IMG/VR virus record: IMGVR_UViG_3300024262_006558
Span: 248,001 to 312,000 of that record
Direction: 5' to 3' (one strand)
DNA length: 64,000 nt
Both the position numbers and the translations under genes were made by a program. This document shows, piece after piece, positions 7,927-47,672 of the stretch (position 1 is the first letter of the stretch; the number at the start of each line of letters is the position of its first letter). The notes beneath the pieces were generated by a model. It was not told where the DNA came from, did not search any database, and saw only the letters and a list, made by a program, of their open reading frames with translations.

Positions 7927-8253
7927 TAATTTCCGCAACTTCGTAAACCTTATACTTAAGCTCTCCCTATGTGGAGGGCTTTTTTTGTTTAGCTGAAAAG
8001 TAAACTTTCCTATAAGTACATAATATCCCCACCACCGTATATATTGGTGAATTAAAACTAAAATCTTTATGAATAGATTAAAATTAATAAACCAGTTAAT
8101 GTCAAGAAAAAATGGAAGAAGAAATATTTCACTCATACGATACTGAATACATAAAAGAATGTATCGAAAACGAAAGCTGAAAAATAAAGTTTTCCTATAA
8201 GTACATAATATCCCCATCACCGTATATATTAGTGAACGAAAACAAAACACATC

Positions 8254-8709
8254 ATGAAAAAGTATAGAGTAAAACTTACAAGCGAAAGCAATCATAGACA
8301 AGACCAAAAGGTTATCGACCCAAAGAATCCCGAATCAGGATTTTATCTTGGAGATGTTTATTCAGAAACGCCATCACTTTATAGTAGAGGTGAAGCAGTT
8401 AAAAAAGCAAAAACTTTCAATGGTAAGATTGAAGTATACAACGGAGCGTATCAAATTGTAGATGTTATCAGTGTTGCTCATGTACCTTATGACTCTTTAC
8501 CCGATGTAGTTAAAGCTGAGTTTGAAAAGCATTCTCCTTCCTTCCAAGATACGGATGAAACATTAGGAGAGCAAATGTTTTCTGTAGATGCAATCAAAGA
8601 AGAGGTAATTGCAGAGTGTAAAACTGAATCTACTAGAGTAGAGTTGAGAGAATTGTATGAGATTCTTAATGATGGTAGTTTCTGTTATGTTTCATTTATA
8701 AAAGCTTAA
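8254..8709 (+). CDS. hypothetical protein
   Basis: ORF track. Confidence 0.75.
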   Translation: MKKYRVKLTSESNHRQDQKVIDPKNPESGFYLGDVYSETPSLYSRGEAVKKAKTFNGKIEVYNGAYQIVDVISVAHVPYDSLPDVVKAEFEKHSPSFQDTDETLGEQMFSVDAIKEEVIAECKTESTRVELRELYEILNDGSFCYVSFIKA

Positions 8710-8712
8710 GGT

Positions 8713-9003
8713 ATGAAAAAGATATATTTTAATTTGATGGAAGTGGGTAACCACGAATGTCCAAACATGGGAGTTGTTGAAACTCAAATAGATAAGGAAT
8801 TCAATATATCTGATGATAGTATTGATAGCAAAATAAAGCAGTGTATTCAATCTCACATGGATGCGGAAGTTGTTGATATGTCAAAGATTGATGTGATGCA
8901 AGCCCATCAAGCTTGTGGAGTTGAATTTGAAGTAACCATTGATAATGATGGTGAAATTCAAAAAATTAAAGTTGAAGTTGAACAAACCTGGTTATACTCA
9001 TGA
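8713..9003 (+). CDS. hypothetical protein
   Basis: ORF track. Confidence 0.7.
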   Translation: MKKIYFNLMEVGNHECPNMGVVETQIDKEFNISDDSIDSKIKQCIQSHMDAEVVDMSKIDVMQAHQACGVEFEVTIDNDGEIQKIKVEVEQTWLYS

Positions 9004-9200
9004 AAGCAAAATTAGTAAAAGTCTCCCTAATGACTAGAGTAGTTGTTGGGGATAACGCAACGGAAGAAGAAATCTTAGAAGCATCTAAGGCTCAACTAGT
9101 TGATAAGATTATGAATGAACTTGGAGACAATGTAGAAGAGGTCGAAGATGATGAAGAAATGCCTTATGGTCTAGGGTTAGGGGAGGATGAGGATTTATAA
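9000..9200 (+). CDS. hypothetical acidic protein
   Basis: ORF track; ATGA overlap with the previous gene. Confidence 0.7.
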   Translation: MKAKLVKVSLMTRVVVGDNATEEEILEASKAQLVDKIMNELGDNVEEVEDDEEMPYGLGLGEDEDL

Positions 9201-9266
9201 CTCTCCCCATGAGTACATAATATCCCCTCGAATGTATATATTGTTGAACTAAAAAGAAATATTATT

Positions 9267-10148
9267 ATGGGATGCGACATTCACATCATTGCCGAAGTAA
9301 AGGAGAACGGAGTCTGGAAAAAGAACACCAACAAAGTTTTCCTTAATCCTTATTACGAAATGTATAAGGGCATTAAGGTGACAGACCCAGCTCGATACAA
9401 AGAAATCAAAAAGGGTAACTGGATAGACCTTAAAAAGTTTATGGATGAGCCTTCAAGTGGTAGAAATTACAATTGGTTTGCCGTTCTAGCCGATGTTAGA
9501 AATGGTAGAGGGTTCGCTGGAATAAAAACGGGTGAAGGCTTTGATCCAATTGCAGATCCTAAAGGTTTTCCTAGTGATGCTTCAAGAGAAACAATGGAGT
9601 TTCTTGGGATGGTCATTGACGACAACATGACTATGGATGATTACAAAGAAAATGGTGGAGAAATCGACTTAGGCAATGGGGATTATAAATACGTTTACCC
9701 TCGTTTAAAAATCATTGACTGGGGCTGTAAGTATCTCGATGAAGAAGAAACGATTGCGGAAAATGTTGACTACCATAGTTACTCATATTTCACCGCAAAA
9801 GAATTAGCCGAGTTTGATTGGAAAGGTAAAATGACTATGCTTAGAGGAACTATATCTTTAGAGCAATATAAATCTTTGCAAGAAAAAGGAGGAGAGCCAA
9901 CAGAAGGTTGGTGCGGTGCTTCTTGGGGCAAAGGTTTTGTCACCGTAGATGAAGACCAAGCCGATAAGATTTTGAAAGATGGCGTGGAGGGTACAGAGTT
10001 TGAAGGTAAAACTATTAAAGTAAATTATCATTGGATGGATGGTTACCACAAAATGTTTGAGCATGAATTGAAAACAATTGTTGAGCCATTAAAAAAGCTC
10101 TCCATGAAATATGAAGATGCAAGAATAGTATTTGCATTTGACAATTAA
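9267..10148 (+). CDS. conserved phage hypothetical protein (MGCDIH...RNYNWFAVLADVRN type)
   Basis: N-terminal MGCDIH motif, recognised from memory as recurrent in large phages. Confidence 0.8.
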   Translation: MGCDIHIIAEVKENGVWKKNTNKVFLNPYYEMYKGIKVTDPARYKEIKKGNWIDLKKFMDEPSSGRNYNWFAVLADVRNGRGFAGIKTGEGFDPIADPKGFPSDASRETMEFLGMVIDDNMTMDDYKENGGEIDLGNGDYKYVYPRLKIIDWGCKYLDEEETIAENVDYHSYSYFTAKELAEFDWKGKMTMLRGTISLEQYKSLQEKGGEPTEGWCGASWGKGFVTVDEDQADKILKDGVEGTEFEGKTIKVNYHWMDGYHKMFEHELKTIVEPLKKLSMKYEDARIVFAFDN

Positions 10149-10244
10149 GAAAAGGTGAGCTGTATGGCTCACCTTTTTTGTTTAACTGAAAAGTACATAA
10201 TATCCCCCGCCTCGTATATATTGGTGAACTTAAATAAAAACATC

Positions 10245-10490
10245 ATGGCAGTAAGAATGGATATAAATGGATACTTAGGAATCACCTTCCACGATATTAA
10301 AACTGGAAAAGAAGTAGACCGTAAGACTGAAAAAGCTATTGCGGAAAAGCTACAAACTGGTGACTATGTAATTGGAATTGTTCAAAAACTGATATATGAC
10401 TTATCAGATTTCGAAAACCCTCCTTATGCGATTGAAATAGATTCCACTGATGGAGTTGAATTTGACTGGGATGTATTTGACGAACTGTAA
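10245..10490 (+). CDS. hypothetical protein
   Basis: Start moved to ATG at 10245; leader identical to that of the gene at 1206. Confidence 0.7.
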   Translation: MAVRMDINGYLGITFHDIKTGKEVDRKTEKAIAEKLQTGDYVIGIVQKLIYDLSDFENPPYAIEIDSTDGVEFDWDVFDEL

Positions 10491-10502
10491 AATTTAGAAA
10501 TC

Positions 10503-10718
10503 ATGAAAGCAATTCAAAGAGAAGATATGGAAGATGAAATGATTCCAGTAAAGAATGAAGAAACTGGAGATGAATCATACATGGAACTTAGAACTCCAGT
10601 AAGATCGGAACAGCATGAAGACTGGGAAGATCGAGCATTCTATAATACTAGACTGTTCTTAGAAGATGGGACTGTTGTGCTGGCTATGTCTGTGGATTTA
10701 GATTTCATAAACGATTAG
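10503..10718 (+). CDS. hypothetical protein
   Basis: ORF track; TAG overlaps the next repeat. Confidence 0.7.
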   Translation: MKAIQREDMEDEMIPVKNEETGDESYMELRTPVRSEQHEDWEDRAFYNTRLFLEDGTVVLAMSVDLDFIND

Positions 10719-10769
10719 TACATAATATCCCCCGCCCCGTATATATTATTGAATTTAAACGAAAAAATT

Positions 10770-11225
10770 ATGAATCCAATTATCATTCAAGCATTAGAAA
10801 AAGCAATAGAAGCAATTGATCTTAACGACAAATTTGGAGACGACAGCGATGCAAAAGAATCAGCAGAGATCGAAGCCGTAAGCTTACTACACGCAGCATT
10901 GGCGGAAGCTAAGAAAATACCACAGCCTATATTAGCTAGTGATGCCGATAACTATGACAGTATGAATGTTTTGGTGTCAAGCTTAAAAAGAGCTAGGCAA
11001 GAAAGATATGAAGACTTATTAGATCAAGGATTTACTGAAGAAGGTGCAAGGGTAGAATCTCATGAAAACATAGAGATGGAGTTCTATTACGAGAAAGGAT
11101 CGGGCTTATTTGCTGTGGAATCTGAAGCCGTTGAAACTAATACAATCATCTCTCCCTATACAGGTGGAGAAATCCTAGAAGATGAATTGTATTGCGAAAG
11201 AATGACTAAATTTAATAATCAATAA
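10770..11225 (+). CDS. hypothetical acidic protein
   Basis: ORF track. Confidence 0.75.
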   Translation: MNPIIIQALEKAIEAIDLNDKFGDDSDAKESAEIEAVSLLHAALAEAKKIPQPILASDADNYDSMNVLVSSLKRARQERYEDLLDQGFTEEGARVESHENIEMEFYYEKGSGLFAVESEAVETNTIISPYTGGEILEDELYCERMTKFNNQ

Positions 11226-22721: not shown

Positions 22722-23195
22722 ATGACTAAATCAAAAAACTCTACTGAAGTAGCAAAGGCATCTTTAACTTTAACTCAAGCTGATGTGCCTGCTCAAATAG
22801 ACCTGCTGAAAAAACAACTACAAGAAATCCAAGGAGACGGAAAAACAAAAATCTCTACCGATGTCTCCTATAAAGGTAGTAAAATCAACAAAGTCTCTAC
22901 AGTAAAAGAACTGTTAGAAATATCAGCTTCAATACATGCTAGAGCTAAAGCATTTGAAGAAGAAACCGCCAGATATAAAATGGAAGGTAAATTAGATAAA
23001 TTCCAAACAGAAGGACACACTCCAGAACAATGGAAACTTATTATAGAAAAAGCAATCTTTGATAAAGTGAACAGTGTGCAAATAAGTAATATTAAAAAAG
23101 CTATCTCTGAACTAGAAGAATTCCTTAGCGATGAAGCTAAACTACAAAACAAACTGTCGCAAATTGTCAATATGGCTAACCAAAAAATAGCATAA
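22722..23195 (+). CDS. hypothetical coiled-coil protein
   Basis: ORF track, after a class II promoter. Confidence 0.75.
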   Translation: MTKSKNSTEVAKASLTLTQADVPAQIDLLKKQLQEIQGDGKTKISTDVSYKGSKINKVSTVKELLEISASIHARAKAFEEETARYKMEGKLDKFQTEGHTPEQWKLIIEKAIFDKVNSVQISNIKKAISELEEFLSDEAKLQNKLSQIVNMANQKIA

Positions 23196-23241
23196 CATAA
23201 AAGAGCCTTTCAATAGGCTCTTTTTTTTTACTCTCTCTACT

Positions 23242-23448
23242 ATGAAAAAAGAAATCTTGTTTGAACTTAATCGCTTTGGTGATAGAAAATATTATCTTGA
23301 TGATGAACTCCATAGAGAAGATGGCCCAGCCGTTGAATATTCTAATGGAGATAAAGAGTGGCGCCTGAATGGTAAAGAATTAACCGAAGAAGAGTTTAAT
23401 AAGAAGATAACCGAATTGAATGTGTCTAAAATACACGAGCTATGGTAA
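23242..23448 (+). CDS. HREDGPA-repeat protein, array gene 1 (1 unit)
   Basis: 22-aa WxLNGKxHRxDGPA repeat (MORN-variant-like) plus tail ELTEEEFNKKITELNVSKIHELW. Confidence 0.8.
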   Translation: MKKEILFELNRFGDRKYYLDDELHREDGPAVEYSNGDKEWRLNGKELTEEEFNKKITELNVSKIHELW

Positions 23449-23855
23449 AGCAAGAACCTATATGTAAAACAACTGCCTATGGAGATAAGCATTGGTATCT
23501 CAATGGAAAGCAACATCGTGAAGATGGTCCAGCCGTTGAATGGGCTGATGGAACTAAATTCTGGTACCTCAATGGAAAACGCCATAGAGAAGATGGCCCA
23601 GCCGTTGAATATGCATATGGAACTAAAGCTTGGTGGATTAATGGAGAACTACATAGATTAGGAGGACCATCAGTCACTGATGAAGATGGTAAGTTCTGGT
23701 ACCTCAATGGAAAACGCCATAGAGAAGATGGTCCAGCCGTTGAATATAACGATGGAACTAAAGAATGGTTTCTTAATGGTAAAAAATTAACCGAAGAAGA
23801 GTTTAATAAGAAGATAACCGAATTGAATGTGTCTAAAATACATGAGCTATGGTAG
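23442..23855 (+). CDS. HREDGPA-repeat protein, array gene 2 (4 units)
   Basis: Same repeat and tail; 7-nt overlap with gene 1. Confidence 0.85.
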   Translation: MVKQEPICKTTAYGDKHWYLNGKQHREDGPAVEWADGTKFWYLNGKRHREDGPAVEYAYGTKAWWINGELHRLGGPSVTDEDGKFWYLNGKRHREDGPAVEYNDGTKEWFLNGKKLTEEEFNKKITELNVSKIHELW

Positions 23856-24127
23856 AACAGGAACCTATATGTAAAACAACTTCCGATGGAACTAAAAACT
23901 GGTTTCTGAATGGAAAGCATCATCGTGAAGATGGGCCAGCCGTTGAATATACTAATGGAGATAATCACTGGTTCCTTCATGGAAAACGCCATAGAGAAGA
24001 TGGTCCAGCTGTTGAATTAGCAGGTGGATATAAATATTGGTTCCTTCATGGTAAAGAATTAACCGAAGAAGAATTTAATAAGAAGATAACCGAATTGAAT
24101 GTGTCTAAAATACATGAGCTATGGTAG
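23849..24127 (+). CDS. HREDGPA-repeat protein, array gene 3 (2 units)
   Basis: MVEQEPICKTT head, IHELW tail. Confidence 0.85.
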   Translation: MVEQEPICKTTSDGTKNWFLNGKHHREDGPAVEYTNGDNHWFLHGKRHREDGPAVELAGGYKYWFLHGKELTEEEFNKKITELNVSKIHELW

Positions 24128-24399
24128 AACAGGAACCTATATGTAAAACAACTTCCGATGGAGATAAATGTTGGTACCTGAATGGAAAAAGGCATAGAGA
24201 AGATGGTCCAGCTATTGAATATGCCGATGGAGACAAAGAATGGTGCCTGAATGGAAAACGCCATAGAGAAGATGGTCCAGCTGTTGAATTAGCAGGTGGA
24301 TATAAATATTGGTTCCTTCATGGTAAAGAATTAACCAAAAAAGAGTTTAATAAAAAGATCTCCGAATTGAATGTGTCTAAAATACACGAGCTATGGTAG
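24121..24399 (+). CDS. HREDGPA-repeat protein, array gene 4 (2 units)
   Basis: Same head, repeat and tail. Confidence 0.85.
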   Translation: MVEQEPICKTTSDGDKCWYLNGKRHREDGPAIEYADGDKEWCLNGKRHREDGPAVELAGGYKYWFLHGKELTKKEFNKKISELNVSKIHELW

Positions 24400-24671
24400 A
24401 ACAGGAACCTATATGTAAAACAACTGCCGATGGAGATAAGCATTGGTATCTGAATGGAAAGCATCATCGTGAAGATGGTCCAGCTATTGAAAGGGTTAAT
24501 GGATCTAAATACTGGTATCTGAATGGAAAGCATCATCGTGAAGATGGTCCAGCTATTGAATATGCCAATGGAGATAAATACTGGTTTCTCAATGGTAAAG
24601 AATTAACCGAAGAAGAATTTAATAAGAAGATAACCGAATTGAATGTGTCTAAAATACACGAGCTATGGTAG
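24393..24671 (+). CDS. HREDGPA-repeat protein, array gene 5 (2 units)
   Basis: Same head, repeat and tail. Confidence 0.85.
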   Translation: MVEQEPICKTTADGDKHWYLNGKHHREDGPAIERVNGSKYWYLNGKHHREDGPAIEYANGDKYWFLNGKELTEEEFNKKITELNVSKIHELW

Positions 24672-25009
24672 AACAGGAACCTATATGTAGATTATTTCCA
24701 GATGGAACTAAACAATGGTACCTAAATAGAAAGCTTCATCGTGAAGATGGGCCAGCCGTTGAATATACTAATGGAGATAAATGTTGGTTTATTAATGATA
24801 AACTTCATAGATTAGATGGCCCAGCTGTGGAGTCTATTGGAGATAAGCAATGGTGTTTAAATGGAAAAAGACATCGTGAAGATGGCCCAGCTGTTGAATG
24901 TTCTGATGGAGATAAATTTTGGTTTCTTAATGGTAAAAAATTAACCGAAGAAAAATACAATGAAGAGATCGCTAAATTGAATGCATCTAAAATACATGAG
25001 TTATGGTAG
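24665..25009 (+). CDS. HREDGPA-repeat protein, array gene 6 (3 units)
   Basis: Same head, repeat and tail. Confidence 0.85.
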   Translation: MVEQEPICRLFPDGTKQWYLNRKLHREDGPAVEYTNGDKCWFINDKLHRLDGPAVESIGDKQWCLNGKRHREDGPAVECSDGDKFWFLNGKKLTEEKYNEEIAKLNASKIHELW

Positions 25010-25488
25010 AACAAGAACCTATATGTAAAACATGTTCCAATGGAGATAAAGAATGGTATCTCAATGGAAAACTACATAGAGTAGATGAGCCAGCTATTGA
25101 ATCTGCCAATGGACATAAACTATGGTATCTCAATGGAAAGCAACATCGTGAAGATGGTCCAGCTTGTGAATATGCCAATGGAGATAAATCTTGGTACCTG
25201 AATGGAGAAAGGCATAGAGAAGATGGTCCAGCTATTGAATCTGCCAATGGAGATAAATCTTGGTTCCTTCATGGAAAACGCCATAGAGAAGATGGTCCAG
25301 CTATTGAATCTGCCAATGGACATAAACTATGGTATCTCAATGGAAAAAGGCATAGAGTAGATGGTCCAGCCTGTGAATGGAGCAATGGAGACAAAGAATG
25401 GTTCCTTCATGGGAAAGAGTTAAGCGAAGAAGAATTTAATAAGAAGATCTCCGAATTGAATGCATCTAAAATACACGAGCTATGGTAA
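25003..25488 (+). CDS. HREDGPA-repeat protein, array gene 7 (5 units)
   Basis: Same head, repeat and tail. Confidence 0.85.
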   Translation: MVEQEPICKTCSNGDKEWYLNGKLHRVDEPAIESANGHKLWYLNGKQHREDGPACEYANGDKSWYLNGERHREDGPAIESANGDKSWFLHGKRHREDGPAIESANGHKLWYLNGKRHRVDGPACEWSNGDKEWFLHGKELSEEEFNKKISELNASKIHELW

Positions 25489-25567: not shown

Positions 25568-25864
25568 ATGAAAAAAAGATATACATTAGCAAAGCAGGCA
25601 AAAGTTGGAGAGACATGCACATGTCCAAGTTGCGGCACTCAGTTCGAGAAAACCAATTACCAACAAGCTTTCTGTAAATCTAAAGGCGGAACTATATGTA
25701 AAGATAAGTATTGGAATACAGTAACTCCAAACAAAAGAAATAACACTACAAGAATTTCGCCAGCGTCAGCAAGATGGATGGCTCAACAAGCCCAGGAAAG
25801 AGAAGACTTTGACCCTTATGACATGGAGCATCCATTTAGCTCGGAAGCTCTGGGACAATGGTAA
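25568..25864 (+). CDS. Cys-rich (zinc-binding) hypothetical protein
   Basis: CTCPSC...C...C; last + strand gene, preceded by a 36-bp repeat. Confidence 0.75.
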   Translation: MKKRYTLAKQAKVGETCTCPSCGTQFEKTNYQQAFCKSKGGTICKDKYWNTVTPNKRNNTTRISPASARWMAQQAQEREDFDPYDMEHPFSSEALGQW

Positions 25865-26972
25865 ACAAAAACTTCGGAATCACTACCATTCAACGCCTAG
25901 CGCTTAGCGGACGTAGATTCTAAGCTGGGCATGTGAATGATGTAGCGAAGCGGAATCATTCACGTAACGCGTAGCGTTACTTTGATTAATTATGCCCAGG
26001 CAATAACCGACCAGGTCGGTAATCTTTTTAACTCATCATATAATTAAATGTACGACATGGTATGTCGTACATTTAATAGAGCAGCAACATTATAATTTGC
26101 AACCCAATCTCTGAGAATTTCCGCAAGTTCGTAAACCTAACCCCTTAGCTATGTTAATGAATTTATGCCTGCGGGAATGTGGAGGAATTTTTGCTGGTTT
26201 GTAACAAAGCAGAAAAATGACGACACAAGACTAAAGGCATAAAGAAAAGACATAGCAGCTTGGTCCTGATCTGGATCAGGACAATAACTAGACCTATAAA
26301 AAACTCTTAGCAGCACTCCCATCTTTTTATATTTGTTATCCTCGATAACAAATAGCATTATCCCGACTAGGTCGGGTTTAAATAAACTTCCTAAGAGAAA
26401 GCAACGCTTTCGAAGAATACCTACACTGACCCTCTGAAAATTTCCGCAAACTCGTAAACGATTAACCCGCCACAATCCCCCACTTACCCCCACCCTACTC
26501 TCTGAAAATTTCCGCAAACTCGTAAACGATAAAACATACCAGTAACAACCAACGTTTCTCGTAGAATTTCCGCACTTTCGTAAACGCTATGCAGACACAA
26601 CTCTACATATAAATTTTTTACTTAAAAATAAAGTACATAATATCCCCAACAAAATAGAGATTATTTCGTTTATTAAGTATAGGGAGTTTGGACAAGAACA
26701 GACGCCGCCTTTTAACACGAGAACAAAGGCGGATCCAATAAACAAAAAAGGAGCTTGTCCCCTACCCTATTAAAACATTATGTATACACGCCCAACCGCA
26801 TACCCGCTTACGCGATTATACGGACAGGATTATACAGCCTAAAAAAAAAATTCTCATTATTGTAAATTATAAGTTTGATTATTGTCGCATTTAATCACAC
26901 TTGACTAGGAGTTAACGCAGTGAGAAAAAATTTGGCCCCCTTAATGGAGTGCCGAGCGGCTTCAGTTAGAGA

Positions 26973-26988
26973 TGTTCCACGTGGAACA
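26973..26988. promoter_or_regulatory. parS: parS centromere-like site
   Basis: TGTTCCACGTGGAACA, inside a perfect 24-bp palindrome at 26969-26992, in a long non-coding region. Confidence 0.8.
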
Positions 26989-28181
26989 TCTCGCTAAAGT
27001 CTAAGAATTTTAAAGTTTCCACTTTGGAAACCTGGGTTTTAAAGTTTTTTCGTTGGTTGAAAAACCATGAGGATTTCTGGTGGAAAATCTTGGGCAAATT
27101 GAGTCGCTTTTCTAGAACGCCCCCAGCCCACAAAATGTACTTTTACTCTCCTTCCCTCCAAAAAAACCAATTTTACCTCTTAAAAACCTTTTTTACACCA
27201 AACATACCGCCTAAGTCTCCCCCTAATATAAGCCATTCTAAGCCCCTATAATCTCCCTATTAATACATCATTAATAAGTCTTAAAAACCTCTCTAAAAAC
27301 CTCTTATATATGCACCTATTAACACGTCTATATACTGGGTTAAATCGGGTTAAAAAGTACTCTATTTCTTCATGTGAATAACCTACTCTTTTTACACACA
27401 TATTCACACATATTTTTACATACTTCCTCTCCCTAATTTGGACCTCTCCCTGTGTGGTAAAAAGCGATCAGATTTAGGGCATAAAACCGATGTTAAAAAA
27501 GGGGTTTTGGCGACCCCTTTTTACCATAGAATAACTACCATAATTAATGGCGTAAAAACCTCTAATAACCCTATCCTTTTACTGGGTGTGAAAACGCTCA
27601 AATCACACCTCTCCCTGCCCTATATAATACACCACAATAAACAGCCTATTAATAAGTCATTTTAAGCTCTTCTAAGCGACTCGATTATACATCTGGGGTA
27701 ATGAGTTATTATCTACATAAAAACGTTATTATACATGCTTATATCTAACCTCTCCCTATTCGTAGATTTAAGTCATATACAATTTTGTTGGGGTTTATTT
27801 GTAAGTAATATTTTTTATTAATATTTATTCATGTAACCCTTAATCAGAGGGGGGTTTAGGAAGCTTCAACATAGTTGAATGAAGACTACACTTTTAAACT
27901 ACGTTCCTCAATAGCACGGGTACTAATTACGAAGCATCTCTATAATACTTGGAGGTTCAATGCTAAGTCTGTTTCTATTTTTTCCAAAGGGGGTTGTTGA
28001 TGGGGCAGAGCCTAAACTCAATCGTACTGACTTGACTGACAGCAAGACGAAGGTTAATAAAACAATTCTCAAATCTCTTTCTAACGAAGGGGGTTTGGGG
28101 GTTGTTGTTTAAGACCTACCTCTTCTCACCAGCCTTACTTCCAGCAAATAATTTACTGTCTACAATAGGCATGTATATTAC

Positions 28182-28886
28182 TTATATAGTTCTCCTAGTA
28201 ATTTTGTAGTCTAGTTCACCTCTAAGTTTCTTCTGTTGGAATTCTTGTCTCTTCAAGTAATCTAATATAAAATCCTTAGTAGGGTCTGAAACATATCCTT
28301 CATTAACTAGACGCCAAGGAGATTGGTTATGTACATTTCTTATATACATATCCGCTCCAGCATCGAGTAGAGCTTTAATCATATCCAGTGAAGCTCTTCG
28401 TTCTAGCGCGGCATACAATACGGTCCAGGAAGATGGTGTTGATTGGTAGTTAGGATCTACTCCTAATTCCAACAACAGCTTTAGAGCTTTGGGGGAATTC
28501 TGAGTTGCGGCTTGTACAATTGGAGGGGCCCATTGTTTAGCAATACACCTATGTATATCTACTCCTATTCCGTGTAGGTATTTGATACAATCTACCGAAT
28601 CATAAACGGAGCATATTATAATTAAGCTTCTACTATCTTTGTCTAATTCATCTCTATGAATAGCTCCTACGTATATTAGTTTTTTAAGCGCTAGTGGTTT
28701 ATCGTCTCTAATACATTGTACAGCTATCTCCATAAAATCTATATCTGTTTTGAAGTCTTTGAAGAATTCATTGGACAGGAACTGGAAAGATAGATAGTAG
28801 TCTGACCAATTTATTTGGTCGGCATGTTCTATGAGCCACTCTTCTGTTTTTATAAAATTTCTTTGAGGTATTTCACTTAAGTACAT
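28182..28886 (-). CDS. ankyrin-repeat protein with N-terminal Trp module
   Basis: TEEWLIEHADQINW head; PPIVQAATQNSPKALKLLLELGVDPN. Confidence 0.85.
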   Translation of the reverse strand: MYLSEIPQRNFIKTEEWLIEHADQINWSDYYLSFQFLSNEFFKDFKTDIDFMEIAVQCIRDDKPLALKKLIYVGAIHRDELDKDSRSLIIICSVYDSVDCIKYLHGIGVDIHRCIAKQWAPPIVQAATQNSPKALKLLLELGVDPNYQSTPSSWTVLYAALERRASLDMIKALLDAGADMYIRNVHNQSPWRLVNEGYVSDPTKDFILDYLKRQEFQQKKLRGELDYKITRRTI

Positions 28887-29563
28887 AAAACTTTTTCTTT
28901 AAATTCTTCTTCTCTATGCCTTTCTCCATTCAGATACCAAGATTTATCTCCATTGGCACATTCAATAGCTGGACCATCTTCACGATGTTTTTCTCCATTC
29001 AGATACCAAGATTTATCTCCATTGGCACATTCAATAGCTGGACCATCTTCACGATGTTTTTCTCCATTCAGATACCAAGATTTAGATCCATTGGCATATT
29101 CAACGGCTGGACCATCTACTCTATGTCTTTCTCCATTCAGATACCATTCTTTTTGTCCATCGGCATATTCAACGGCTGGACCATCTACTCTATGTCTTTC
29201 TCCATTCAGATACCAATATTTAGATCCATCGGCATATTCAATGGCTGGACCATCTACTCTATGTCTTTCTCCATTGAGATACCAATATTTAGATCCATCG
29301 CTCCATTCAACGGCGGGTCCATCTTCTCTATGCCTTTCTCCATTAAAAAACCAATACTTATCTCCATCGGCATGTTCAATAGCTGGACCATCTTCTCTAT
29401 GCCTTTTTCCATTCAGGTACCAGTTAGTTATTTCATACTTAAACATATCTCCGAATTCTTTGGAGAAGATATCGGAATGGTATTCGAATTTATCCCAATC
29501 AATAGAGTCGGCATGTTCAATGCACCACTTTTCTCCTTTATCTATGTAATCATTGGCGATCAT
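28877..29563 (-). CDS. Trp module + HREDGPA repeats (7 full units)
   Basis: GEKWCIEHADSIDWDKF head, then 22-aa repeats. Confidence 0.85.
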   Translation of the reverse strand: MIANDYIDKGEKWCIEHADSIDWDKFEYHSDIFSKEFGDMFKYEITNWYLNGKRHREDGPAIEHADGDKYWFFNGERHREDGPAVEWSDGSKYWYLNGERHRVDGPAIEYADGSKYWYLNGERHRVDGPAVEYADGQKEWYLNGERHRVDGPAVEYANGSKSWYLNGEKHREDGPAIECANGDKSWYLNGEKHREDGPAIECANGDKSWYLNGERHREEEFKEKVLCT

Positions 29564-30215
29564 TGTATTTTTTTTCGGTTAATTCTTTTCCATTGAGATA
29601 CCATGATTTATCTCCATCGGCATATTCAATAGCTGGACCATCTTCTCTATGCCTTTTTCCATTGAGATACCATGATTTATCTCCATCGGCATATTCAATA
29701 GCTGGACCATCTTCTCTATGTAGATTTCCATTGAAATACCACTCTTTATGTCCATTGGCCCATTCAACGGCTGGCCCATCTAATCTATGCCTTTCTCCAT
29801 TAATCCACCATTCTTTATGTCCATTGGCAGATTCAATAGCTGGACCATCTTCACGATGATGCTTTCCATTCAGAAACCATTCTTTATATCCATTGACATA
29901 TTCAATAGCTGGTCCATCTAATCTATGCCTTTCTCCATTAATCCACCATTCTTTATGTCCATTGGCATATTCACAAGCTGGACCATCTACTCTATGCCTT
30001 TTTCCATTCAGGTACCATTCTTTGTCTCCATTGACTAATTCAACAGCTGGACCATTTTCTCTATGTAGTTCTCCTTTGGAGTTTTTCCATACAAACCTTA
30101 TAATTTCATATTTAAAGGTTTCAAAGAAATCTTTAGAGTAATAATTCATATCGCATTGGAATGAGTTCCAGTCGAATGAGTCGGCGTGCTTTATGATATA
30201 TTCTTCTGTTTGCAT
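29550..30215 (-). CDS. Trp module + HREDGPA repeats (7 units)
   Basis: TEEYIIKHADSFDW head. Confidence 0.85.
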   Translation of the reverse strand: MQTEEYIIKHADSFDWNSFQCDMNYYSKDFFETFKYEIIRFVWKNSKGELHRENGPAVELVNGDKEWYLNGKRHRVDGPACEYANGHKEWWINGERHRLDGPAIEYVNGYKEWFLNGKHHREDGPAIESANGHKEWWINGERHRLDGPAVEWANGHKEWYFNGNLHREDGPAIEYADGDKSWYLNGKRHREDGPAIEYADGDKSWYLNGKELTEKKYNDRQ

Positions 30216-30841
30216 TGAGTTCTTTGTTTAAAGTCTTCTTCGGTTACTCGTTTACCATTGAGATACCAGTGTTTAGATCCATTGTATTTAATTACAGCTG
30301 GTCCATCTTCTCTATGAAGTTCATCATTGATATACCAAAAATTATCTCCATTGGCATATTCACAGGCTGGACCATCTTCTCTATGTAGTTTTCCATTCAG
30401 GTACCAAAAATTATCTCCATTGGATTTAATTACAGCTGGCTCATCTACTCTATGCCTTTTCCCATTCAGATACCATTCTTTGTCTCCATCGCTCCATTCA
30501 CAGGCTGGACCATCTACTCTATGCCTTTTCCCATTCAGATACCATTCTTTGTCTCCATCGGCATATTCACAGGCTGGACCATCTACTCTATGCCTTTTTC
30601 CATTAATAAACCAATGCTTATCTCCATCGGCATATTCAATAGCTGGCCCATCTACCCTATGACATTTACCATTCAGATACCAATGTTTAATTTCACTTTT
30701 AAACTGTACAGCAAAGTCTGTTGAGAACTTATCTGCATGGTATTCGAATTTATCCCAATCAATCTTATCGGCATTATTAATACACCATTCTTCTCCTAGT
30801 ATAGTATAGTCTTCTGCATTAATATTATCCTGTGTATTCAT
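30191..30841 (-). CDS. Trp module + HREDGPA repeats (6 units)
   Basis: GEEWCINNADKIDW head. Confidence 0.85.
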   Translation of the reverse strand: MNTQDNINAEDYTILGEEWCINNADKIDWDKFEYHADKFSTDFAVQFKSEIKHWYLNGKCHRVDGPAIEYADGDKHWFINGKRHRVDGPACEYADGDKEWYLNGKRHRVDGPACEWSDGDKEWYLNGKRHRVDEPAVIKSNGDNFWYLNGKLHREDGPACEYANGDNFWYINDELHREDGPAVIKYNGSKHWYLNGKRVTEEDFKQRTQCKQKNIS

Positions 30842-30886
30842 TATATTCTCTATAGTAGTTGAAGTGTTATTCTCCTATGTAATATA

Positions 30887-31648
30887 TTAATTATCTATAG
30901 TTGAAGTTGTGTTTTCTAATTGGGGTTCTCCATGAATGTGCCAACGTTTATGTCCATCGACATATTCAACAGATGGACCATCTTCACGATGTCTTTTTCC
31001 ATTTAGCCACCAGGATTTAGTTCCATTGGCAGATTCAATGGCTGGACCATCTACTCTATGTCTTTCTCCATTGAGATACCAAGCTTTATCTCCATCGGCA
31101 TATTCAATGGCTGGACCATCTACTCTATGTCTTTCTCCATTGAGATACCAGTGATTATCTCCATTAGTATATTCAACGGCTGGCCCATCTTCACGATGTT
31201 TTTCTCCATTCAGATACCAAGCTTTATGTCCATCGCTCCATTCAACGGCGGGTCCATCTTCACGATGTTTTTCTCCATTCAGATACCAAGCTTTATCTCC
31301 ATCAGAACATTCAACGGCGGGTCCATCTAATCTATGCCTTTCTCCATTAAGAAACCATTCTTTATATCCATTGGCCCATTCAACGGCTGGCCCATCTTCT
31401 CTATGTCTTTCTCCATTCAGATACCATTCTTCATCTCCATCGCTCCATTCAACGGCGGGTCCATCTTCTCTATGAAGCTTTCCATTCAGATACCAGTTAG
31501 TTATTTCATATCTAAACATTTCACCGAATTCTTTGGAGAAGATATCGGCATGATATTCAAATACATCCCAATCAATATTATCTGCATTAGCGATACACCA
31601 TTTTTCTCCTTTAGTTATATGGAAATTGTTTTCTAAGTTAATAGCCAT
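30887..31648 (-). CDS. Trp module + HREDGPA repeats (8 units)
   Basis: GEKWCIANADNIDW head. Confidence 0.85.
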   Translation of the reverse strand: MAINLENNFHITKGEKWCIANADNIDWDVFEYHADIFSKEFGEMFRYEITNWYLNGKLHREDGPAVEWSDGDEEWYLNGERHREDGPAVEWANGYKEWFLNGERHRLDGPAVECSDGDKAWYLNGEKHREDGPAVEWSDGHKAWYLNGEKHREDGPAVEYTNGDNHWYLNGERHRVDGPAIEYADGDKAWYLNGERHRVDGPAIESANGTKSWWLNGKRHREDGPSVEYVDGHKRWHIHGEPQLENTTSTIDN

Positions 31649-31651
31649 AAT

Positions 31652-32374
31652 CTATTTTGTATTTTCTATATCATCTAGATTATCTATGGTTACGGTTATT
31701 TCTCTAAAGACTCTTTTGTTACTATAGTTAGTTTCTCTGGTTTCCAGTATTCTAGCGCTTGGATATTTACTGGTTAGTAATTTAGAAAGTGCTTCGAAGT
31801 TTTTATCTGATGCTATTGTTTGGTTATCATCATTAAAAGACAGGCCGACTTTTTCCAGGTCTACTTTCTTTTCTTCTATGGTCTTACCTTTATCTCTATA
31901 CGGATCGCATAGCATACCTGAAAGGGTAAGGTTTATTCTACCTGATTGTCCAATGGAGAATTCCTTTATATGTCCTAGTCCTTCTAAGTTCCACCACATC
32001 CAGATATCATCATAGATATTCTTTATTCTTTCTCTAGCGTCTTCGTTGGTTACTTTGTTGCCCAGTTGTTTTCTAAGATCCCTGTTCTCGATGTTCAGGG
32101 ATCTTATCTCTGAGTATCGTTCTTTATTTTGTTGGTCTAGTACCCCTTCATAACCTAAAGTCTTCTGTAATTCTAGAACATAGTGTTCCGAAAGGGATAA
32201 CTGAGTTGCTTTCATTCCTTCAGTAAGTTTACCCGCTTTCAGTTGAGAGTGAAGATGTCCTATGTTAAATTTAATGTCATTATAGGATTTCTCTATAGCT
32301 TTTAGAAGATCTCCTTTGGGATCTTCTACAAGCGTTGTGTCTTCTTTATCAAATGTTAATTGTCTATCTTTCAT
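31652..32374 (-). CDS. hypothetical coiled-coil phage protein
   Basis: ORF track. Confidence 0.75.
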   Translation of the reverse strand: MKDRQLTFDKEDTTLVEDPKGDLLKAIEKSYNDIKFNIGHLHSQLKAGKLTEGMKATQLSLSEHYVLELQKTLGYEGVLDQQNKERYSEIRSLNIENRDLRKQLGNKVTNEDARERIKNIYDDIWMWWNLEGLGHIKEFSIGQSGRINLTLSGMLCDPYRDKGKTIEEKKVDLEKVGLSFNDDNQTIASDKNFEALSKLLTSKYPSARILETRETNYSNKRVFREITVTIDNLDDIENTK

Positions 32375-32894
32375 TATATTTTTCTTCGGTTAATTGTTTA
32401 CCATTCAGATACCACTCTTTATTTCCATCGGCATTTTCAATAGCTGGACCATCTAATCTATGCCTTTCTCCGTTGAGATACCAATATTTAGATCCATTGG
32501 CAGATTCAACAGCTGGGCCATCTAATCTATGACATTTACCATTGATATACCAATATTTAGATCCATCGTTCCATTCAATAGCTGGCTCATCTACTCTATG
32601 CTTCTTTCCATTCAGGTACCAGTATTTATCTCCATTGTCCAATTCCATAGCTGGGCCATCTAATCTATGACATTTACCATTGATATACCAGTATTTAGAT
32701 CCATTGTCAGATTCAATAGCTGGACCATCTACTCTATGGAATTTACCATCTGGGTTTTTACAAACATAAACTAGTATTTCATCTTTAAAGTCATCGGCAA
32801 ATTCCTTTGAATAGGTATTCATATCGCATTGGAATGAGTCCCAATCGAAAGAGTCGGCGTGCTTTATGATATATTCTTCTGAATACTTTTCCAT
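32364..32894 (-). CDS. Trp module + HREDGPA repeats (5 units)
   Basis: SEEYIIKHADSFDW head. Confidence 0.85.
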   Translation of the reverse strand: MEKYSEEYIIKHADSFDWDSFQCDMNTYSKEFADDFKDEILVYVCKNPDGKFHRVDGPAIESDNGSKYWYINGKCHRLDGPAMELDNGDKYWYLNGKKHRVDEPAIEWNDGSKYWYINGKCHRLDGPAVESANGSKYWYLNGERHRLDGPAIENADGNKEWYLNGKQLTEEKYNER

Positions 32895-32902
32895 GAATAA
32901 AT

Positions 32903-33883
32903 TTATTTAAAATCTACTTTTCCATGAAAGTTCCAACCAGTTACAAGGCAATGATCATTGTAGGCTTTGTACTCATGTCCATCTGGAGAAGTAAACGTCA
33001 CCGTGTATGAGCAGACTTGTCCATCATGGTTGTGATATTCGTCAGTACTAGCTTCAAACTCCCACTCTTCAAGGGCGGACCAATCAACTTCAAATTCCTC
33101 ATTCCATTCACTTATAGTTTCTTTATCTAGAATCATATGATCTCCACAAGTATCATATAAAACTCCATTAAGTACTTTCCCATCAATTTCAAATGGGAAA
33201 GGAGGTTTCTTATCTTTTTTACCAAAAATTTTACACAGTAAAGATTCATCTTCCGCTAAACTGATAGCCTTTGGTAATTCATTCATACTAATCTCTATAC
33301 GAGTTTTTAGTATGTAGTTAGCTATACGTTTAAGCGTAGCTTTAGATTTCAATTTCTTCTTGCTATCATTGAGCCATTTTTCTAACTCGACTAAACCTTT
33401 CACAAAGTATTCTTTTTCGTAGTAAGTATGACCCCCATTTCCTGTAGAGAAAGAAAGGCCGCTAAAATAAAAGTCTAATTTTTCATAAGAAACAAAAACG
33501 CCTGTATGATACTCATTAGATCCGAGTAAATTTCTTTCATAAATCTTTTCATCTCTAAACGACTCCTTTTTAAAAACGAATTTCTCTGGGCTTTCTTCCC
33601 AAGCTTTAATAACTTTATTAGCTACTCTCTTAACTTTTTCGGATTCATCTTCAATCTTCTTTAATAATGAGTCAGCTATTTGTTGAACAGCTTCATCAAC
33701 GCCATCAGCGCTAGATATATTAGCTAATACTCCATCTAGATCAATTTCATCAATTCTAATTTTAATATTAGAGAGTTTAACGTTGTGATCAGAAAGGTTT
33801 TCAATCTTGAAATCTGGATTTAAATTGAAGTCTTTGTTTAGGTTCTTCACGAATCCTGATAATGTTATTTCTTTTGCGCTCAT
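32903..33883 (-). CDS. hypothetical protein
   Basis: ORF track. Confidence 0.75.
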   Translation of the reverse strand: MSAKEITLSGFVKNLNKDFNLNPDFKIENLSDHNVKLSNIKIRIDEIDLDGVLANISSADGVDEAVQQIADSLLKKIEDESEKVKRVANKVIKAWEESPEKFVFKKESFRDEKIYERNLLGSNEYHTGVFVSYEKLDFYFSGLSFSTGNGGHTYYEKEYFVKGLVELEKWLNDSKKKLKSKATLKRIANYILKTRIEISMNELPKAISLAEDESLLCKIFGKKDKKPPFPFEIDGKVLNGVLYDTCGDHMILDKETISEWNEEFEVDWSALEEWEFEASTDEYHNHDGQVCSYTVTFTSPDGHEYKAYNDHCLVTGWNFHGKVDFK

Positions 33884-33889
33884 ACCTTT

Positions 33890-34630
33890 TTAATTTGTTT
33901 TAGCAACTACTAATTTCTTTTCTATTTCTGGCTGTACGTAATCTTTATGTTCTCTTATGAAATTTGCCATTTCCTCTTTATAGAAGAAATCGCAAAACAT
34001 GACAGCATTCCTGTCGTGATCATCCACCGCATTAATATCAGCTCCAAGTTCTAGAAGCAGGTCAACAGTTTTTCTTTGATCACTACTTGCCGCCATCATA
34101 AAGGCGGTGCTACCAACATATTCTCTATAGTCTACTCCTAATATTTCTACTAGTATTTTGACTAACGTGTTATAGCCTTGCTCTGCTGACCACATAAACA
34201 TTTCACCTAACTCAAGGGTTTCTTTTGCTTTAACGAAGAAATCTTTTGAAAAGTTGCGTAACAGTGGGAACTTTTCATCTTTATACTTAAGTTTGTGCAT
34301 GTTTTCTAAATACCAAACTTCTTTTTCTTCCGAGTTCTTAAACTTTTGTTTCTTTGCTTTAGATAAAAACTTCTTTGTATTTTTAGAGATTTCTTCACCA
34401 TCAATGTACCATGTTTTTTGGTTATATCTCTTGTCAATTGTGGCTGGACCATCTTCTCTATGCAATAGACCTTCCTCATTTTTCCAAAATAGAATTTTAA
34501 TTTCGCTTTTAAATTCCTTAACAAACTTTTTTGAGAAGATATTCATACTGCACTCAAAATCATCCCAGTTAAATGAATCGGCGTTCTCTGTTATATATTC
34601 TTCGTTATATGTGTCTCTAAATTTGTCCAT
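33890..34630 (-). CDS. chimeric Trp module + HREDGPA unit + second Trp-like module + ankyrin repeats
   Basis: NEEYITENADSFNW; LHREDGPA; GSTAFMMAASSDQRKTVDLLLELGADINAVD. Confidence 0.85.
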   Translation of the reverse strand: MDKFRDTYNEEYITENADSFNWDDFECSMNIFSKKFVKEFKSEIKILFWKNEEGLLHREDGPATIDKRYNQKTWYIDGEEISKNTKKFLSKAKKQKFKNSEEKEVWYLENMHKLKYKDEKFPLLRNFSKDFFVKAKETLELGEMFMWSAEQGYNTLVKILVEILGVDYREYVGSTAFMMAASSDQRKTVDLLLELGADINAVDDHDRNAVMFCDFFYKEEMANFIREHKDYVQPEIEKKLVVAKTN

Positions 34631-47538: not shown

Positions 47539-47672
47539 CGTTCTCGGCAGGACTCGAACCTGCAACCCCCTGTTTGGAAATGTAGAAGGAAGACTTGAAC
47601 ATAGCCAATGGTCTTAGGTAATTGTCATGTCTAAACGATAGACAGGTGCTCTACCAGTTGAGCTACGAGAAC
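47539..47672 (-). tRNA. tRNA-Gly(UCC)-like gene interrupted by a 61-nt insertion in the anticodon loop
   Basis: GTTCTCG/CGAGAAC acceptor, GCTC/GAGC D stem, CCTGT-CT-[61 nt, 47579-47639]-TCC-AA-ACAGG, GCAGG-TTCGAGT-CCTGC. Confidence 0.75.

What the first reader, a model, noticed from the sequence alone, without database searches (positions are those of the whole stretch)
23242..25488. Seven-gene tandem array of variable-length repeat proteins joined by an invariant start/stop overlap
Seen: each gene is a constant head (MVEQEPICK), then 1, 4, 2, 2, 2, 3 or 5 copies of a 22-aa HRxDGPA repeat, then a constant tail (KELTEEEFNKKITELNVSKIHELW). Every junction uses the same 7-nt overlap, ATGGTAG or ATGGTAA: TGG-TAG ends one gene while ATG-GTA starts the next. 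About 70 bp around the junction is nearly identical, whereas residues flanking the GPA core vary. Inference: an accordion-like binder library generated by unequal crossover at two scales (66-bp unit and whole gene), with strict translational coupling or occasional frameshift fusion into one long solenoid.
Basis: partly seen in the sequence, partly recalled or inferred. Interest (0 to 1): 0.68.

Follow-up and report, generated by a model that had tools for sequence, protein, structure and literature searches.

The report
Phage array of MORN-like repeat minigenes
A 389-kb tailed phage carries seven back-to-back small genes for beta-hairpin (MORN-like) repeat proteins that differ mainly in how many 23-residue repeats they hold; the same layout recurs in many other phages, most likely as sets of adjustable protein binders, but their targets are unknown.

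Summary
Seven intact + strand ORFs (23242-25488) are joined by ATGGTAA/ATGGTAG stop-start overlaps and hold 1, 4, 2, 2, 2, 3 and 5 HRxDGPA repeats. Corrections: the unit is 23 aa / 69 bp (17 of 19 units), and gene 1 has a different head.

The window lies in a 388.6-kb contractile-tailed jumbo phage whose gene starts lack a Shine-Dalgarno motif. AlphaFold2 (pLDDT 95.8) gives a single-layer sheet of beta-hairpins with two C-terminal helices. The best solved matches are MORN proteins, but the Pfam MORN and MORN_2 thresholds are not met. Head and tail look like N- and C-caps.

The family is very large, unnamed and mostly viral. All 13 copies in this genome lie within 11.4 kb, in two convergent clusters. 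Variable residues alternate with invariant ones along the predicted strands, which implies one variable sheet face. The gene copies are recombination mosaics.

Other phage contigs show the same plan: array-specific caps, lengths stepping by 23 aa, and stop-start overlaps or gaps of 0-3 nt. Two near-identical contigs differ by exactly three repeats.

Duplication at two scales is supported. A binder role is plausible but untested. Frameshift fusion is not supported. I rate it a new variant of a known kind (repeat-protein gene expansions), of moderate interest.

The parts
23199..23234 (+). Intrinsic-terminator-like hairpin plus T-run that ends the upstream gene (22722-23195), 8 nt before gene 1
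   Evidence: 10-pair stem, T-run; sequence
23242..23448 (+). Gene 1, 68 aa: odd head, 1 repeat, constant tail
   Evidence: Its start context is poor (4th percentile of real starts)
23442..23855 (+). Gene 2, 137 aa, 4 repeats (one of 22 aa); ATGGTAA overlap with gene 1
23849..24127 (+). Gene 3, 92 aa, 2 repeats; ATGGTAG overlap
24121..24399 (+). Gene 4, 92 aa, 2 repeats; its second repeat is identical to that of gene 3
24393..24671 (+). Gene 5, 92 aa, 2 repeats
24665..25009 (+). Gene 6, 114 aa, 3 repeats (one of 22 aa); most diverged head and tail
25003..25488 (+). Gene 7, 161 aa, 5 repeats; the protein that was folded
25568..25864 (+). Co-directional 98-aa Cys-rich ORF after the array (phrog_8162), probably in the same transcription unit; not a family member
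25964..26020 (+). Two terminator-like hairpins downstream of the + strand block
28877..32894 (-). Convergent second cluster: five larger paralogs (28877-29563, 29550-30215, 30191-30841, 30887-31648, 32364-32894; 176-253 aa, 5-8 repeats). They have a shared ~45-aa N-terminal module and a short helical C-cap. One unrelated ORF (31652-32374) interrupts the cluster
33890..34630 (-). Hybrid paralog: the same N-terminal module, one HREDGPA hairpin, then ankyrin repeats

Best explanation
The seven ORFs are real paralogous genes of a contractile-tailed jumbo phage. The predicted fold is a MORN-like single-layer beta-sheet. The array grew and is reshuffled by unequal recombination and gene conversion, both between 69-bp units and between whole 272-bp genes; this is shown by sequence. 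The genes are packed so that one mRNA can express all of them. Each internal start lies 4 nt before the upstream stop, in the phage's normal A-rich, unstructured start context, so re-initiation and direct initiation are both possible; this step is inferred. The proposed function, also inferred, is a co-expressed set of protein-binding scaffolds of graded length. One sheet face would be conserved and the other variable. They would act inside the infected cell on host or competitor proteins, in host takeover or counter-defence. The same 'cap-(repeat)n-cap minigene array' recurs in many unrelated phages and changes repeat number between near-identical genomes.
For: Anatomy.
Virus type: tail sheath phrog_23, E 2.5e-64; no NCLDV capsid hit, though that search also found nothing in the control genomes.
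Start signals: no Shine-Dalgarno motif, with an A-rich stretch at -14..-10.
Fold: AlphaFold2 pLDDT 95.8 for gene 7 and 96.7 for a - strand paralog. The top Foldseek PDB hits are all MORN proteins (MORN1, junctophilin, MORN4, radial-spoke proteins), E 9e-6 to 1e-3. VIA-align Z is about 8.
MORN function: MORN repeats are protein-protein interaction modules (PMC7725318).
Solubility: no hydrophobic segment, pI 5-6.4.
Variable face: repeat positions 8, 10, 16 and 18 vary while positions 7, 9, 15, 17 and 19 are invariant or nearly so within the predicted strands.
Selection: dN/dS 0.15 at conserved codons, 0.18 in the tail and 0.82 at variable codons.
Recombination mosaic. Some units are up to 94% identical between the two inverted clusters.
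Family: at least 7,964 relatives, with the search saturated, and none with an informative name (all 'hypothetical protein' or blank). Atlas clusters are 93-100% viral.
Arrays elsewhere: 42 of 90 distinct runs hold several genes. Gaps are mostly -4 (26 cases) or 0-3 nt (33 cases), and lengths step by 23 aa.
Repeat-number change: a 3-repeat indel between contigs whose flanks are 99.9% and 98.9% identical.
Neighbours: replication and nucleotide-metabolism genes, not virion genes, in other phages (ThyX in 7 loci, ligase, MazG, PolA).
Fusions: the repeat module is fused to MazG, DUF3310, DUF5824 or DUF7666 in other proteins, as expected of an adaptor module.
Against: No target, expression data or phenotype exists. 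dN/dS at variable codons is below 1, so positive selection is not shown. The fold match is to a broad class: the CPAP G-box scores Z 7.9 and OspA 6.9. The homodimer test gave no verdict. Copy number in this phage could not be checked with reads. The contig-to-contig repeat differences come from short-read metagenome assemblies, which can collapse repeats. No promoter for the array was found between the upstream terminator and gene 1.
Confidence: 0.6

Rival explanations
1. Immunity-type neutralisers. The array would be a 'poly-immunity' locus of YwqK-like (MORN_2) antitoxin or immunity proteins. Each would block a different host abortive-infection toxin or a polymorphic toxin of competitors.
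For: MORN_2 proteins are named 'YwqK family antitoxin' in NCBI annotation (my own knowledge). There are weak MORN_2 matches. Tandem, fast-changing paralogs are typical of immunity loci (my own knowledge, not tested here). This is a special case of the binder model.
Against: MORN_2 scores 10-14 bits against a cut-off of 29.6. None of the neighbours scanned has a toxin domain. There are no PADLOC matches.
Confidence: 0.15
2. Envelope or virion role. The proteins would bind cell wall or membrane, or decorate the particle, as reported for MORN repeats in some endolysins and for secreted MORN2 proteins of Fusobacterium.
For: MORN repeats have been reported in phage endolysins (statement in PMC9238414). 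Fusobacterium MORN2 families are mostly secreted and expand by local duplication (PMC4222103).
Against: There is no signal peptide or hydrophobic segment and no lytic domain. Neighbours in other phages are replication and nucleotide-metabolism genes. TbMORN1 did not bind membranes (PMC7725318).
Confidence: 0.1
3. One long solenoid made by programmed frameshifting or stop read-through across the junctions.
For: All junctions are identical, and the next frame continues the same repeat type.
Against: The downstream frame has a TAA 15 nt before each ATG. There is no slippery heptamer and no downstream structure. TAG read-through ends at TGA after 19 junk codons. Genome stop usage is normal (TAA 223, TAG 27, TGA 26). 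Other arrays use unrelated junctions.
Confidence: 0.03
4. Assembly artefact, or functionless repeat DNA that merely stays open.
For: Repeats are a known cause of misassembly (PMC9238414). Long antisense ORFs also run across the repeats.
Against: The copies differ by 12-24% and all seven frames are intact. Purifying selection acts on structural codons (dN/dS 0.15). The longest exact repeat is 89 bp. The fold is predicted with high confidence. The same layout appears in dozens of independent assemblies, and the family is present in a cultured phage (Celeribacter phage P12053L gene 09).
Confidence: 0.05

Closest known systems
Eukaryotic MORN repeat proteins (MORN1, junctophilins, MORN4, radial-spoke RSP1/10; Pfam PF02493)
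   Same: Both have a 23-residue period, with each unit a beta-hairpin plus loop in an elongated single-layer sheet. Both keep a Trp in the second strand, a Gly at the hairpin turn and a G-K-x-H stretch. They are the best structural matches. MORN repeats act as protein-protein interaction modules (PMC7725318).
   Different: No Pfam MORN hit at E up to 1. D-G-P-A replaces the GxG motif, and K-x-W-[YF]-L replaces YEGEW. The proteins here are tiny, stand-alone and phage-encoded, with their own helical C-cap (L-T-E-E-E-F).
Bacterial MORN_2 (PF07661) gene expansions in Fusobacterium; YwqK-type proteins
   Same: Repeats of 22-23 aa, many paralogs made by local duplication, and a variable number of repeats per gene (PMC4222103).
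   Different: 87% of the Fusobacterium proteins have signal peptides; none do here. The MORN_2 threshold is not met. The genes here are stop-start overlapped minigenes with constant caps.
Repeat-protein multigene families of giant viruses (ankyrin, MORN, FNIP; 'genomic accordion')
   Same: Viral clusters of repeat-protein paralogs that expand and contract (PMC5753266). Mimivirus R871, Megavirus and Marseillevirus proteins are close structural matches. Ankyrin proteins sit beside the - strand cluster.
   Different: The host is bacterial and the virus is a tailed phage. The genes are 68-161 codons long, appear polycistronic, and have quantised lengths.
Pfam DUF6745 (PF20530)
   Same: It is the only Pfam family that reaches threshold on relatives. 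The - strand paralogs score 29-33 bits, and the Atlas clusters are auto-named DUF6745.
   Different: Only profile positions about 61-107 of 206 are matched, roughly one or two hairpins. The seven array genes score 13-26.5 bits, below the cut-off of 27. No function is attached to the name.
Designed repeat-protein binders (DARPin-style N-cap, n repeats, C-cap), as a functional analogy only
   Same: Constant caps, a variable number of internal units, and variation concentrated at alternate surface positions.
   Different: Those are ankyrin helical units and man-made. Binding has not been shown for the phage proteins.

Membership tests
MORN repeat (PF02493; structure-based definition in PMC7725318) | 23-residue repeat period | tested here: met
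   TRF period 69 bp; 17 of 19 units are 23 aa
MORN repeat (PF02493; structure-based definition in PMC7725318) | Each unit is a beta-hairpin plus connecting loop, and units stack into a single-layer sheet | tested here: met
   AlphaFold2 model, pLDDT 95.8, with hairpins in every unit. MORN chains are the top hits. This is predicted, not solved
MORN repeat (PF02493; structure-based definition in PMC7725318) | GxG, G10 and YEGEW sequence motifs; a match to the Pfam model | tested here: not met
   No PF02493 hit at E up to 1. The motifs are D-G-P-A and K-x-W-[YF]-L instead. Only the turn Gly and the Trp are kept
MORN_2 / YwqK-type (PF07661) | Score at or above the gathering cut-off (29.6 bits) | tested here: not met
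   10.4 and 14.2 bits, E 0.92 and 0.054
DUF6745 (PF20530) | Score at or above 27 bits over the domain | tested here: inconclusive
   Array genes score 13-26.5 bits. The - strand paralogs score 26.6-33.3 bits, but over only about 45 of 206 profile positions
Programmed -1 ribosomal frameshift site | Slippery heptamer, an open -1 frame across the site, and a downstream stimulatory structure | tested here: not met
   TAA in the downstream frame 15 nt before the ATG and no X-XXY-YYZ motif. The junction RNA is no more structured than shuffled sequence
Translationally coupled polycistronic genes | Stop and start codons overlap or abut | tested here: met
   7-nt overlap at all six junctions. Related arrays have gaps of -4 or 0-3 nt
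Translationally coupled polycistronic genes | Downstream translation depends on upstream translation | not testable with these tools
   This needs reporter fusions or Ribo-seq. The internal starts also have a normal autonomous start context
Poly-immunity or antitoxin locus | A linked toxin gene, or a match to known defence or toxin families | tested here: inconclusive
   The scanned neighbours have no toxin domain and there are no PADLOC matches. Targets could be encoded by the host

The most novel reading that the evidence does not exclude
Tailed phages of many lineages may carry a so far undescribed class of 'natural binder libraries'. These would be operon-like arrays of capped MORN-like minigenes. 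Their repeat number (in 23-aa steps) and one sheet face would diversify by unequal recombination between near-identical genomes, letting the phage track varying host targets such as defence proteins. That would be a prokaryotic-virus counterpart of the repeat-protein accordions of giant viruses.
Probability: 0.3. Interest if true: 0.75.

Novelty: new variant of a known kind. Interest (0 to 1): 0.5.

Why it matters
This is a very large protein family: at least about 8,000 clusters at 90% identity were found in one saturated search. It is mostly viral and has no informative name, no described function and no solved structure. No paper I could find mentions its motif.

If the arrays are adjustable binder sets, they would be a general phage tool for engaging host proteins, possibly for counter-defence. 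They would also be a natural scaffold for engineered binders, being small, cysteine-poor, modular and predicted with very high confidence.

The arrays also illustrate why repeat-rich phage genes are under-recovered in short-read viromes (PMC9238414).

If the proteins turn out to be simple structural or inert proteins, the finding is just one more repeat-gene expansion.

Tried and rejected
Copy number and population variation in this phage remain unchecked.
- Complex prediction on two copies of gene 5 returned 'no answer'. It is not evidence either way.
- A megablast of the region against the GenBank phage collection found nothing.
- A profile search of PDB sequences found no relative.
- NCBIfam and PADLOC gave nothing meaningful for the family.
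- PHROGs gave only weak hits to families of unknown function.
- Literature searches for DUF6745, the HREDGPA, REDGPA and WYLNG motifs, and 'MORN repeat' with 'jumbo phage' found nothing relevant.
- The Agrobacterium phage Atu_ph07 hit looked like an overlapping pair, but only one of the two genes belongs to the family. I do not count it as an array.
- A recurrent 'neighbour family' in the clustering proved to be antisense ORFs across the repeats.
- An alternative genetic code was considered and rejected. Stop usage is ordinary, and reading TAG as sense gives junk.
Full report
**1. What is in the sequence**

Between 23242 and 25488 the + strand holds seven intact ORFs of 68, 137, 92, 92, 92, 114 and 161 codons. 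Each of the six junctions reads ATGGTAA (once) or ATGGTAG (five times). The upstream gene ends ...TGG-TAG while the next gene starts ATG-GTA, one base back, which gives a 7-nt overlap.

Tandem Repeats Finder reports periods of 69 bp and 272 bp; the 272-bp period is the whole gene minus the overlap (4.0 copies, 85% matches).

The unit is therefore 23 aa, not 22: 17 of 19 units are 23 aa and two are 22 aa. Gene 1 has an unrelated-looking head, gene 2 starts MVK, and gene 6 has the most diverged head and tail. Seventy-seven of 99 columns from -72 to +27 around the six junctions are invariant.

The 'head' is itself a degenerate half-repeat: E-P-I-C-K...D-G-x-K-x-W-Y-L-N-G-K compares with G-P-A-V-E...N-G-D-K-x-W-Y-L-N-G-K.

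**2. Where it lies**

The window is bases 248001-312000 of a 388,594-bp virus record.
- A 765-aa ORF elsewhere in the genome is a tail sheath (phrog_23, E 2.5e-64).
- No NCLDV capsid was found, although that search also found nothing in the control genomes.

This is therefore a contractile-tailed jumbo phage.

Gene starts in the genome have no Shine-Dalgarno motif. Instead they have an A-rich stretch at -14 to -10, and TAAAA is the commonest upstream 5-mer. From general knowledge this is typical of Bacteroidota-type initiation, so that host assignment is an inference.

All 13 genomic copies of the repeat family lie within 11.4 kb:
- the seven + strand genes;
- a convergent - strand cluster at 28877-34630, with five larger paralogs (176-253 aa, 5-8 repeats) and one hybrid of a single hairpin plus ankyrin repeats.

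The six - strand family genes and one neighbouring ankyrin protein (seven genes in all) share a ~45-aa N-terminal module. The two clusters face each other across a 2.3-kb stretch without convincing ORFs, at the GC-skew switch.

**3. What the proteins are**

*Sequence families.* Pfam gives only near- or sub-threshold DUF6745 matches and very weak MORN_2 matches. NCBIfam, PADLOC and PDB sequence searches give nothing.

*Predicted fold.* AlphaFold2 on gene 7, with a 50-sequence alignment, gives pLDDT 95.8. The model is a row of beta-hairpins, one per 23-aa unit, closed by two short C-terminal helices. A - strand paralog gives pLDDT 96.7. In that model the N-terminal module forms a small helix-strand cap and a single C-terminal helix follows.

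*Structural matches.*
- The top Foldseek PDB hits are all MORN proteins: MORN1 of three parasites, junctophilin-1 and -2, MORN4 with Myo3a, and radial-spoke proteins, at E 9e-6 to 1e-3.
- VIA-align Z is about 8, only slightly above the CPAP G-box (7.9) and OspA (6.9). The safe statement is 'single-layer hairpin-repeat sheet, closest to MORN'.
- Against predicted viral structures, the best matches are uncharacterised proteins of uncultured tailed phages. Next come Megavirus and Mimivirus (R871), Marseillevirus, and giant-virus proteins named 'MORN repeat'.

*Comparison with the MORN definition (PMC7725318).* The 23-aa period, the hairpin plus loop, a turn glycine and the strand tryptophan are all present. 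The GxG and YEGEW motifs are replaced by D-G-P-A and K-x-W-[YF]-L. I therefore call the proteins MORN-like, not members of Pfam MORN or MORN_2.

*Physical properties.* The proteins have no hydrophobic segment and a pI of 5.0-6.4, so they should be soluble and cytoplasmic.

**4. Caps and the variable face**

The first half of the 'constant tail' (K-E-L-T-E-E-E-F) is a family-wide C-cap. It also ends the - strand paralogs and many distant relatives. The second half (...NVSKIHELW) is specific to this array.

Entropy over 17 (+ strand) and 32 (- strand) in-register units shows two classes of position:
- invariant or nearly so: H1, R2, D4, G5, P6, A7, E9, G13, K15, W17, L19, N20, G21;
- variable: 8, 10, 11, 12, 14, 16, 18, 23.

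Within the predicted strands (A-V-E-Y and K-E-W-Y-L), variable and invariant residues alternate. This implies one conserved and one variable sheet face; it is an inference from the DSSP string combined.

Nei-Gojobori estimates:

| Codon class | dN/dS |
|---|---|
| Conserved repeat codons | 0.15 |
| Tail | 0.18 |
| Variable repeat codons | 0.82 |

This shows strong constraint on the scaffold and near-neutral change on the variable face. It is not proof of positive selection.

**5. How the array evolves**

The three 92-codon genes are mosaics:
- Genes 3 and 4 have 0/66 differences in unit 2, but 15/69 in unit 1 and 7/72 in the tail.
- Genes 3 and 5 have 1/72 differences in the tail, but 13/66 in unit 2.

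Exact shared tracts of 86-89 bp lie in a background of 12-16% divergence. Some + strand units have their nearest relative in the inverted - strand cluster, at up to 94% identity. These patterns point to unequal crossover and gene conversion among units and among genes.

**6. The same plan in other phages**

A pattern scan of IMG/VR found 92 related places. In the 79 loci fetched:
- 42 of 90 distinct runs hold two or more adjacent family genes, and up to nine by my run criterion. Raw counts reach 14 and 20 family ORFs in single 12-kb loci.
- Intergenic distances are mostly -4 nt (ATGA, 26 cases) or 0-3 nt (33 cases).
- Within an array, heads and tails are constant but differ between phages.
- Lengths step by 23 aa, for example 120/143/166 and 107/130/153/176.

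Contig GC content ranges from 0.32 to 0.62, so the hosts are diverse.

Two contigs from different samples have flanks that are 99.9% and 98.9% identical, and they differ by a 207-bp (3-unit) indel in one gene. Another pair diverges inside the second array gene. As a caveat, these are short-read assemblies.

The cultured Celeribacter phage P12053L has a single copy (gene 09), two genes downstream of thyX in its left-end region. Recurrent neighbours elsewhere are ThyX (7 loci), ligases, MazG and family-A DNA polymerase. That is the replication and nucleotide-metabolism module, not the virion module.

In other proteins the repeat module is fused to MazG, DUF3310, DUF5824 or DUF7666.

The word-index search saturated at 7,964 relatives. 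None carries an informative name: those that have one are called 'hypothetical protein'. Atlas clusters are 93-100% viral. A pattern scan of 185,579 bacterial and archaeal genomes found only eight loci, all in metagenome-assembled genomes. That scan reaches close relatives only, so it does not show that bacteria lack the family.

**7. Expression logic**

A strong terminator-like hairpin with a T-run ends 8 nt before gene 1. Two more follow the 98-codon ORF after gene 7. No sigma-70-like promoter stands out above chance.

Each internal ATG has TAAAA at -15 to -11, encoded by the S-K-I codons of the upstream tail. These starts score at the 27th-66th percentile of real starts in this genome and at the 89th-98th percentile of random ATGs. 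The junction RNA is, if anything, less structured than shuffled controls: z-scores are +0.4 to +1.5 for five junctions and -0.85 for one.

The overlap therefore permits termination-reinitiation, but direct initiation is equally plausible, so 'strict' coupling is not shown.

Fusion by frameshift is unlikely, for these reasons:
- the downstream frame has a TAA 15 nt before each ATG;
- there is no slippery heptamer or stimulatory structure;
- reading through TAG meets TGA after 19 junk codons;
- stop usage in the genome is ordinary (TAA 223, TAG 27, TGA 26). The five TAG stops in the array simply reflect copying of one junction.

**8. Most likely function**

Shown or strongly predicted:
- these are real genes under purifying selection;
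- the fold is a capped MORN-like hairpin sheet of variable length;
- the array shows two-scale recombinational turnover;
- the architecture is widespread in phages;
- the proteins are cytoplasmic and not encoded in virion modules.

Inferred: the proteins are protein-binding scaffolds, made together, that engage host or competitor proteins during infection (takeover or counter-defence). Length and one sheet face would set specificity.

Indirect support comes from three sources. MORN repeats are known protein-protein interaction modules (PMC7725318). Local expansions of MORN2 genes with varying repeat number occur in Fusobacterium (PMC4222103). Repeat-protein 'accordions' occur in giant viruses (PMC5753266).

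The rivals are given in their own section: an immunity-type subset of the binder model, an envelope or virion role, frameshift fusion, and artefact.

**9. Limits**

I did not try to get round this.
- The complex prediction gave no verdict.
- No alternative genetic code was used.

**10. Verdict**

I rate the novelty as a new variant of a known kind: viral and bacterial repeat-protein gene expansions, with a MORN-like fold. The family-wide 'cap-(23 aa)n-cap minigene array' pattern in phages appears undescribed in the literature I could search. Interest is 0.5.

Noticed in passing
window 25900-28150: About 2.3 kb without a convincing ORF, between the two convergent repeat-gene clusters and at the GC-skew and strand switch. 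It holds four copies of a ~30-37-nt direct repeat (at 26106, 26429, 26497, 26555), a perfect 16-nt hairpin (26043-26077) and several short GC-rich stem-loops. It could hold terminators, iterons or an origin, a packaging site, or small RNAs.
   Followed up: partly
window 28182-34630 (- strand): Seven genes share a ~45-aa N-terminal module (motif H-A-D-x-[FI]-[DN]-W). In different genes it is followed by MORN-like hairpins, by ankyrin repeats, or by both. So one constant module is joined to different repeat scaffolds. In the AlphaFold2 model the module forms a small helix-strand cap.
   Followed up: partly
window 47539-47672 (- strand): Rfam calls a tRNA (55.6 bits) that spans 134 nt for a 71-position model. 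ARAGORN found no tRNA anywhere in the window. This may be an intron-containing or otherwise interrupted tRNA gene.
   Followed up: no
whole genome (G000); window-wide: Gene starts lack a Shine-Dalgarno motif. They show an A-rich stretch at -14..-10, with TAAAA the commonest upstream 5-mer. This suggests a Bacteroidota-type host for this 389-kb phage.
   Followed up: partly
window 23477-23992 (-), 28916-29596 (+) and similar: Long ORFs (up to 226 aa) run antisense across the repeat genes and recur in other phages' arrays. They appear to be by-products of the repeat composition and not genes.
   Followed up: partly
window 31652-32374 (- strand): A 240-aa ORF with no family match sits inside the - strand cluster, between two MORN-like paralogs.
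   Followed up: no
window 28182-28886 (- strand): The ankyrin protein next to the - strand cluster matches the PADLOC candidate-defence model PDC-M72A (E 1.2e-9). This is probably only through its ankyrin repeats.
   Followed up: no
window 25568-25864 (+ strand): A 98-aa Cys-rich (zinc-ribbon-like) ORF directly follows the array (phrog_8162, E 2.8e-17, with a weak HNH-endonuclease family hit). It may be co-transcribed with the array.
   Followed up: no
L099 (ENA contig of 410,992 bp), 8676-11205: Another jumbo-phage-sized contig carries a 254-aa family member. It lies beside a Kelch-repeat protein, within a long run of small unannotated ORFs.
   Followed up: no
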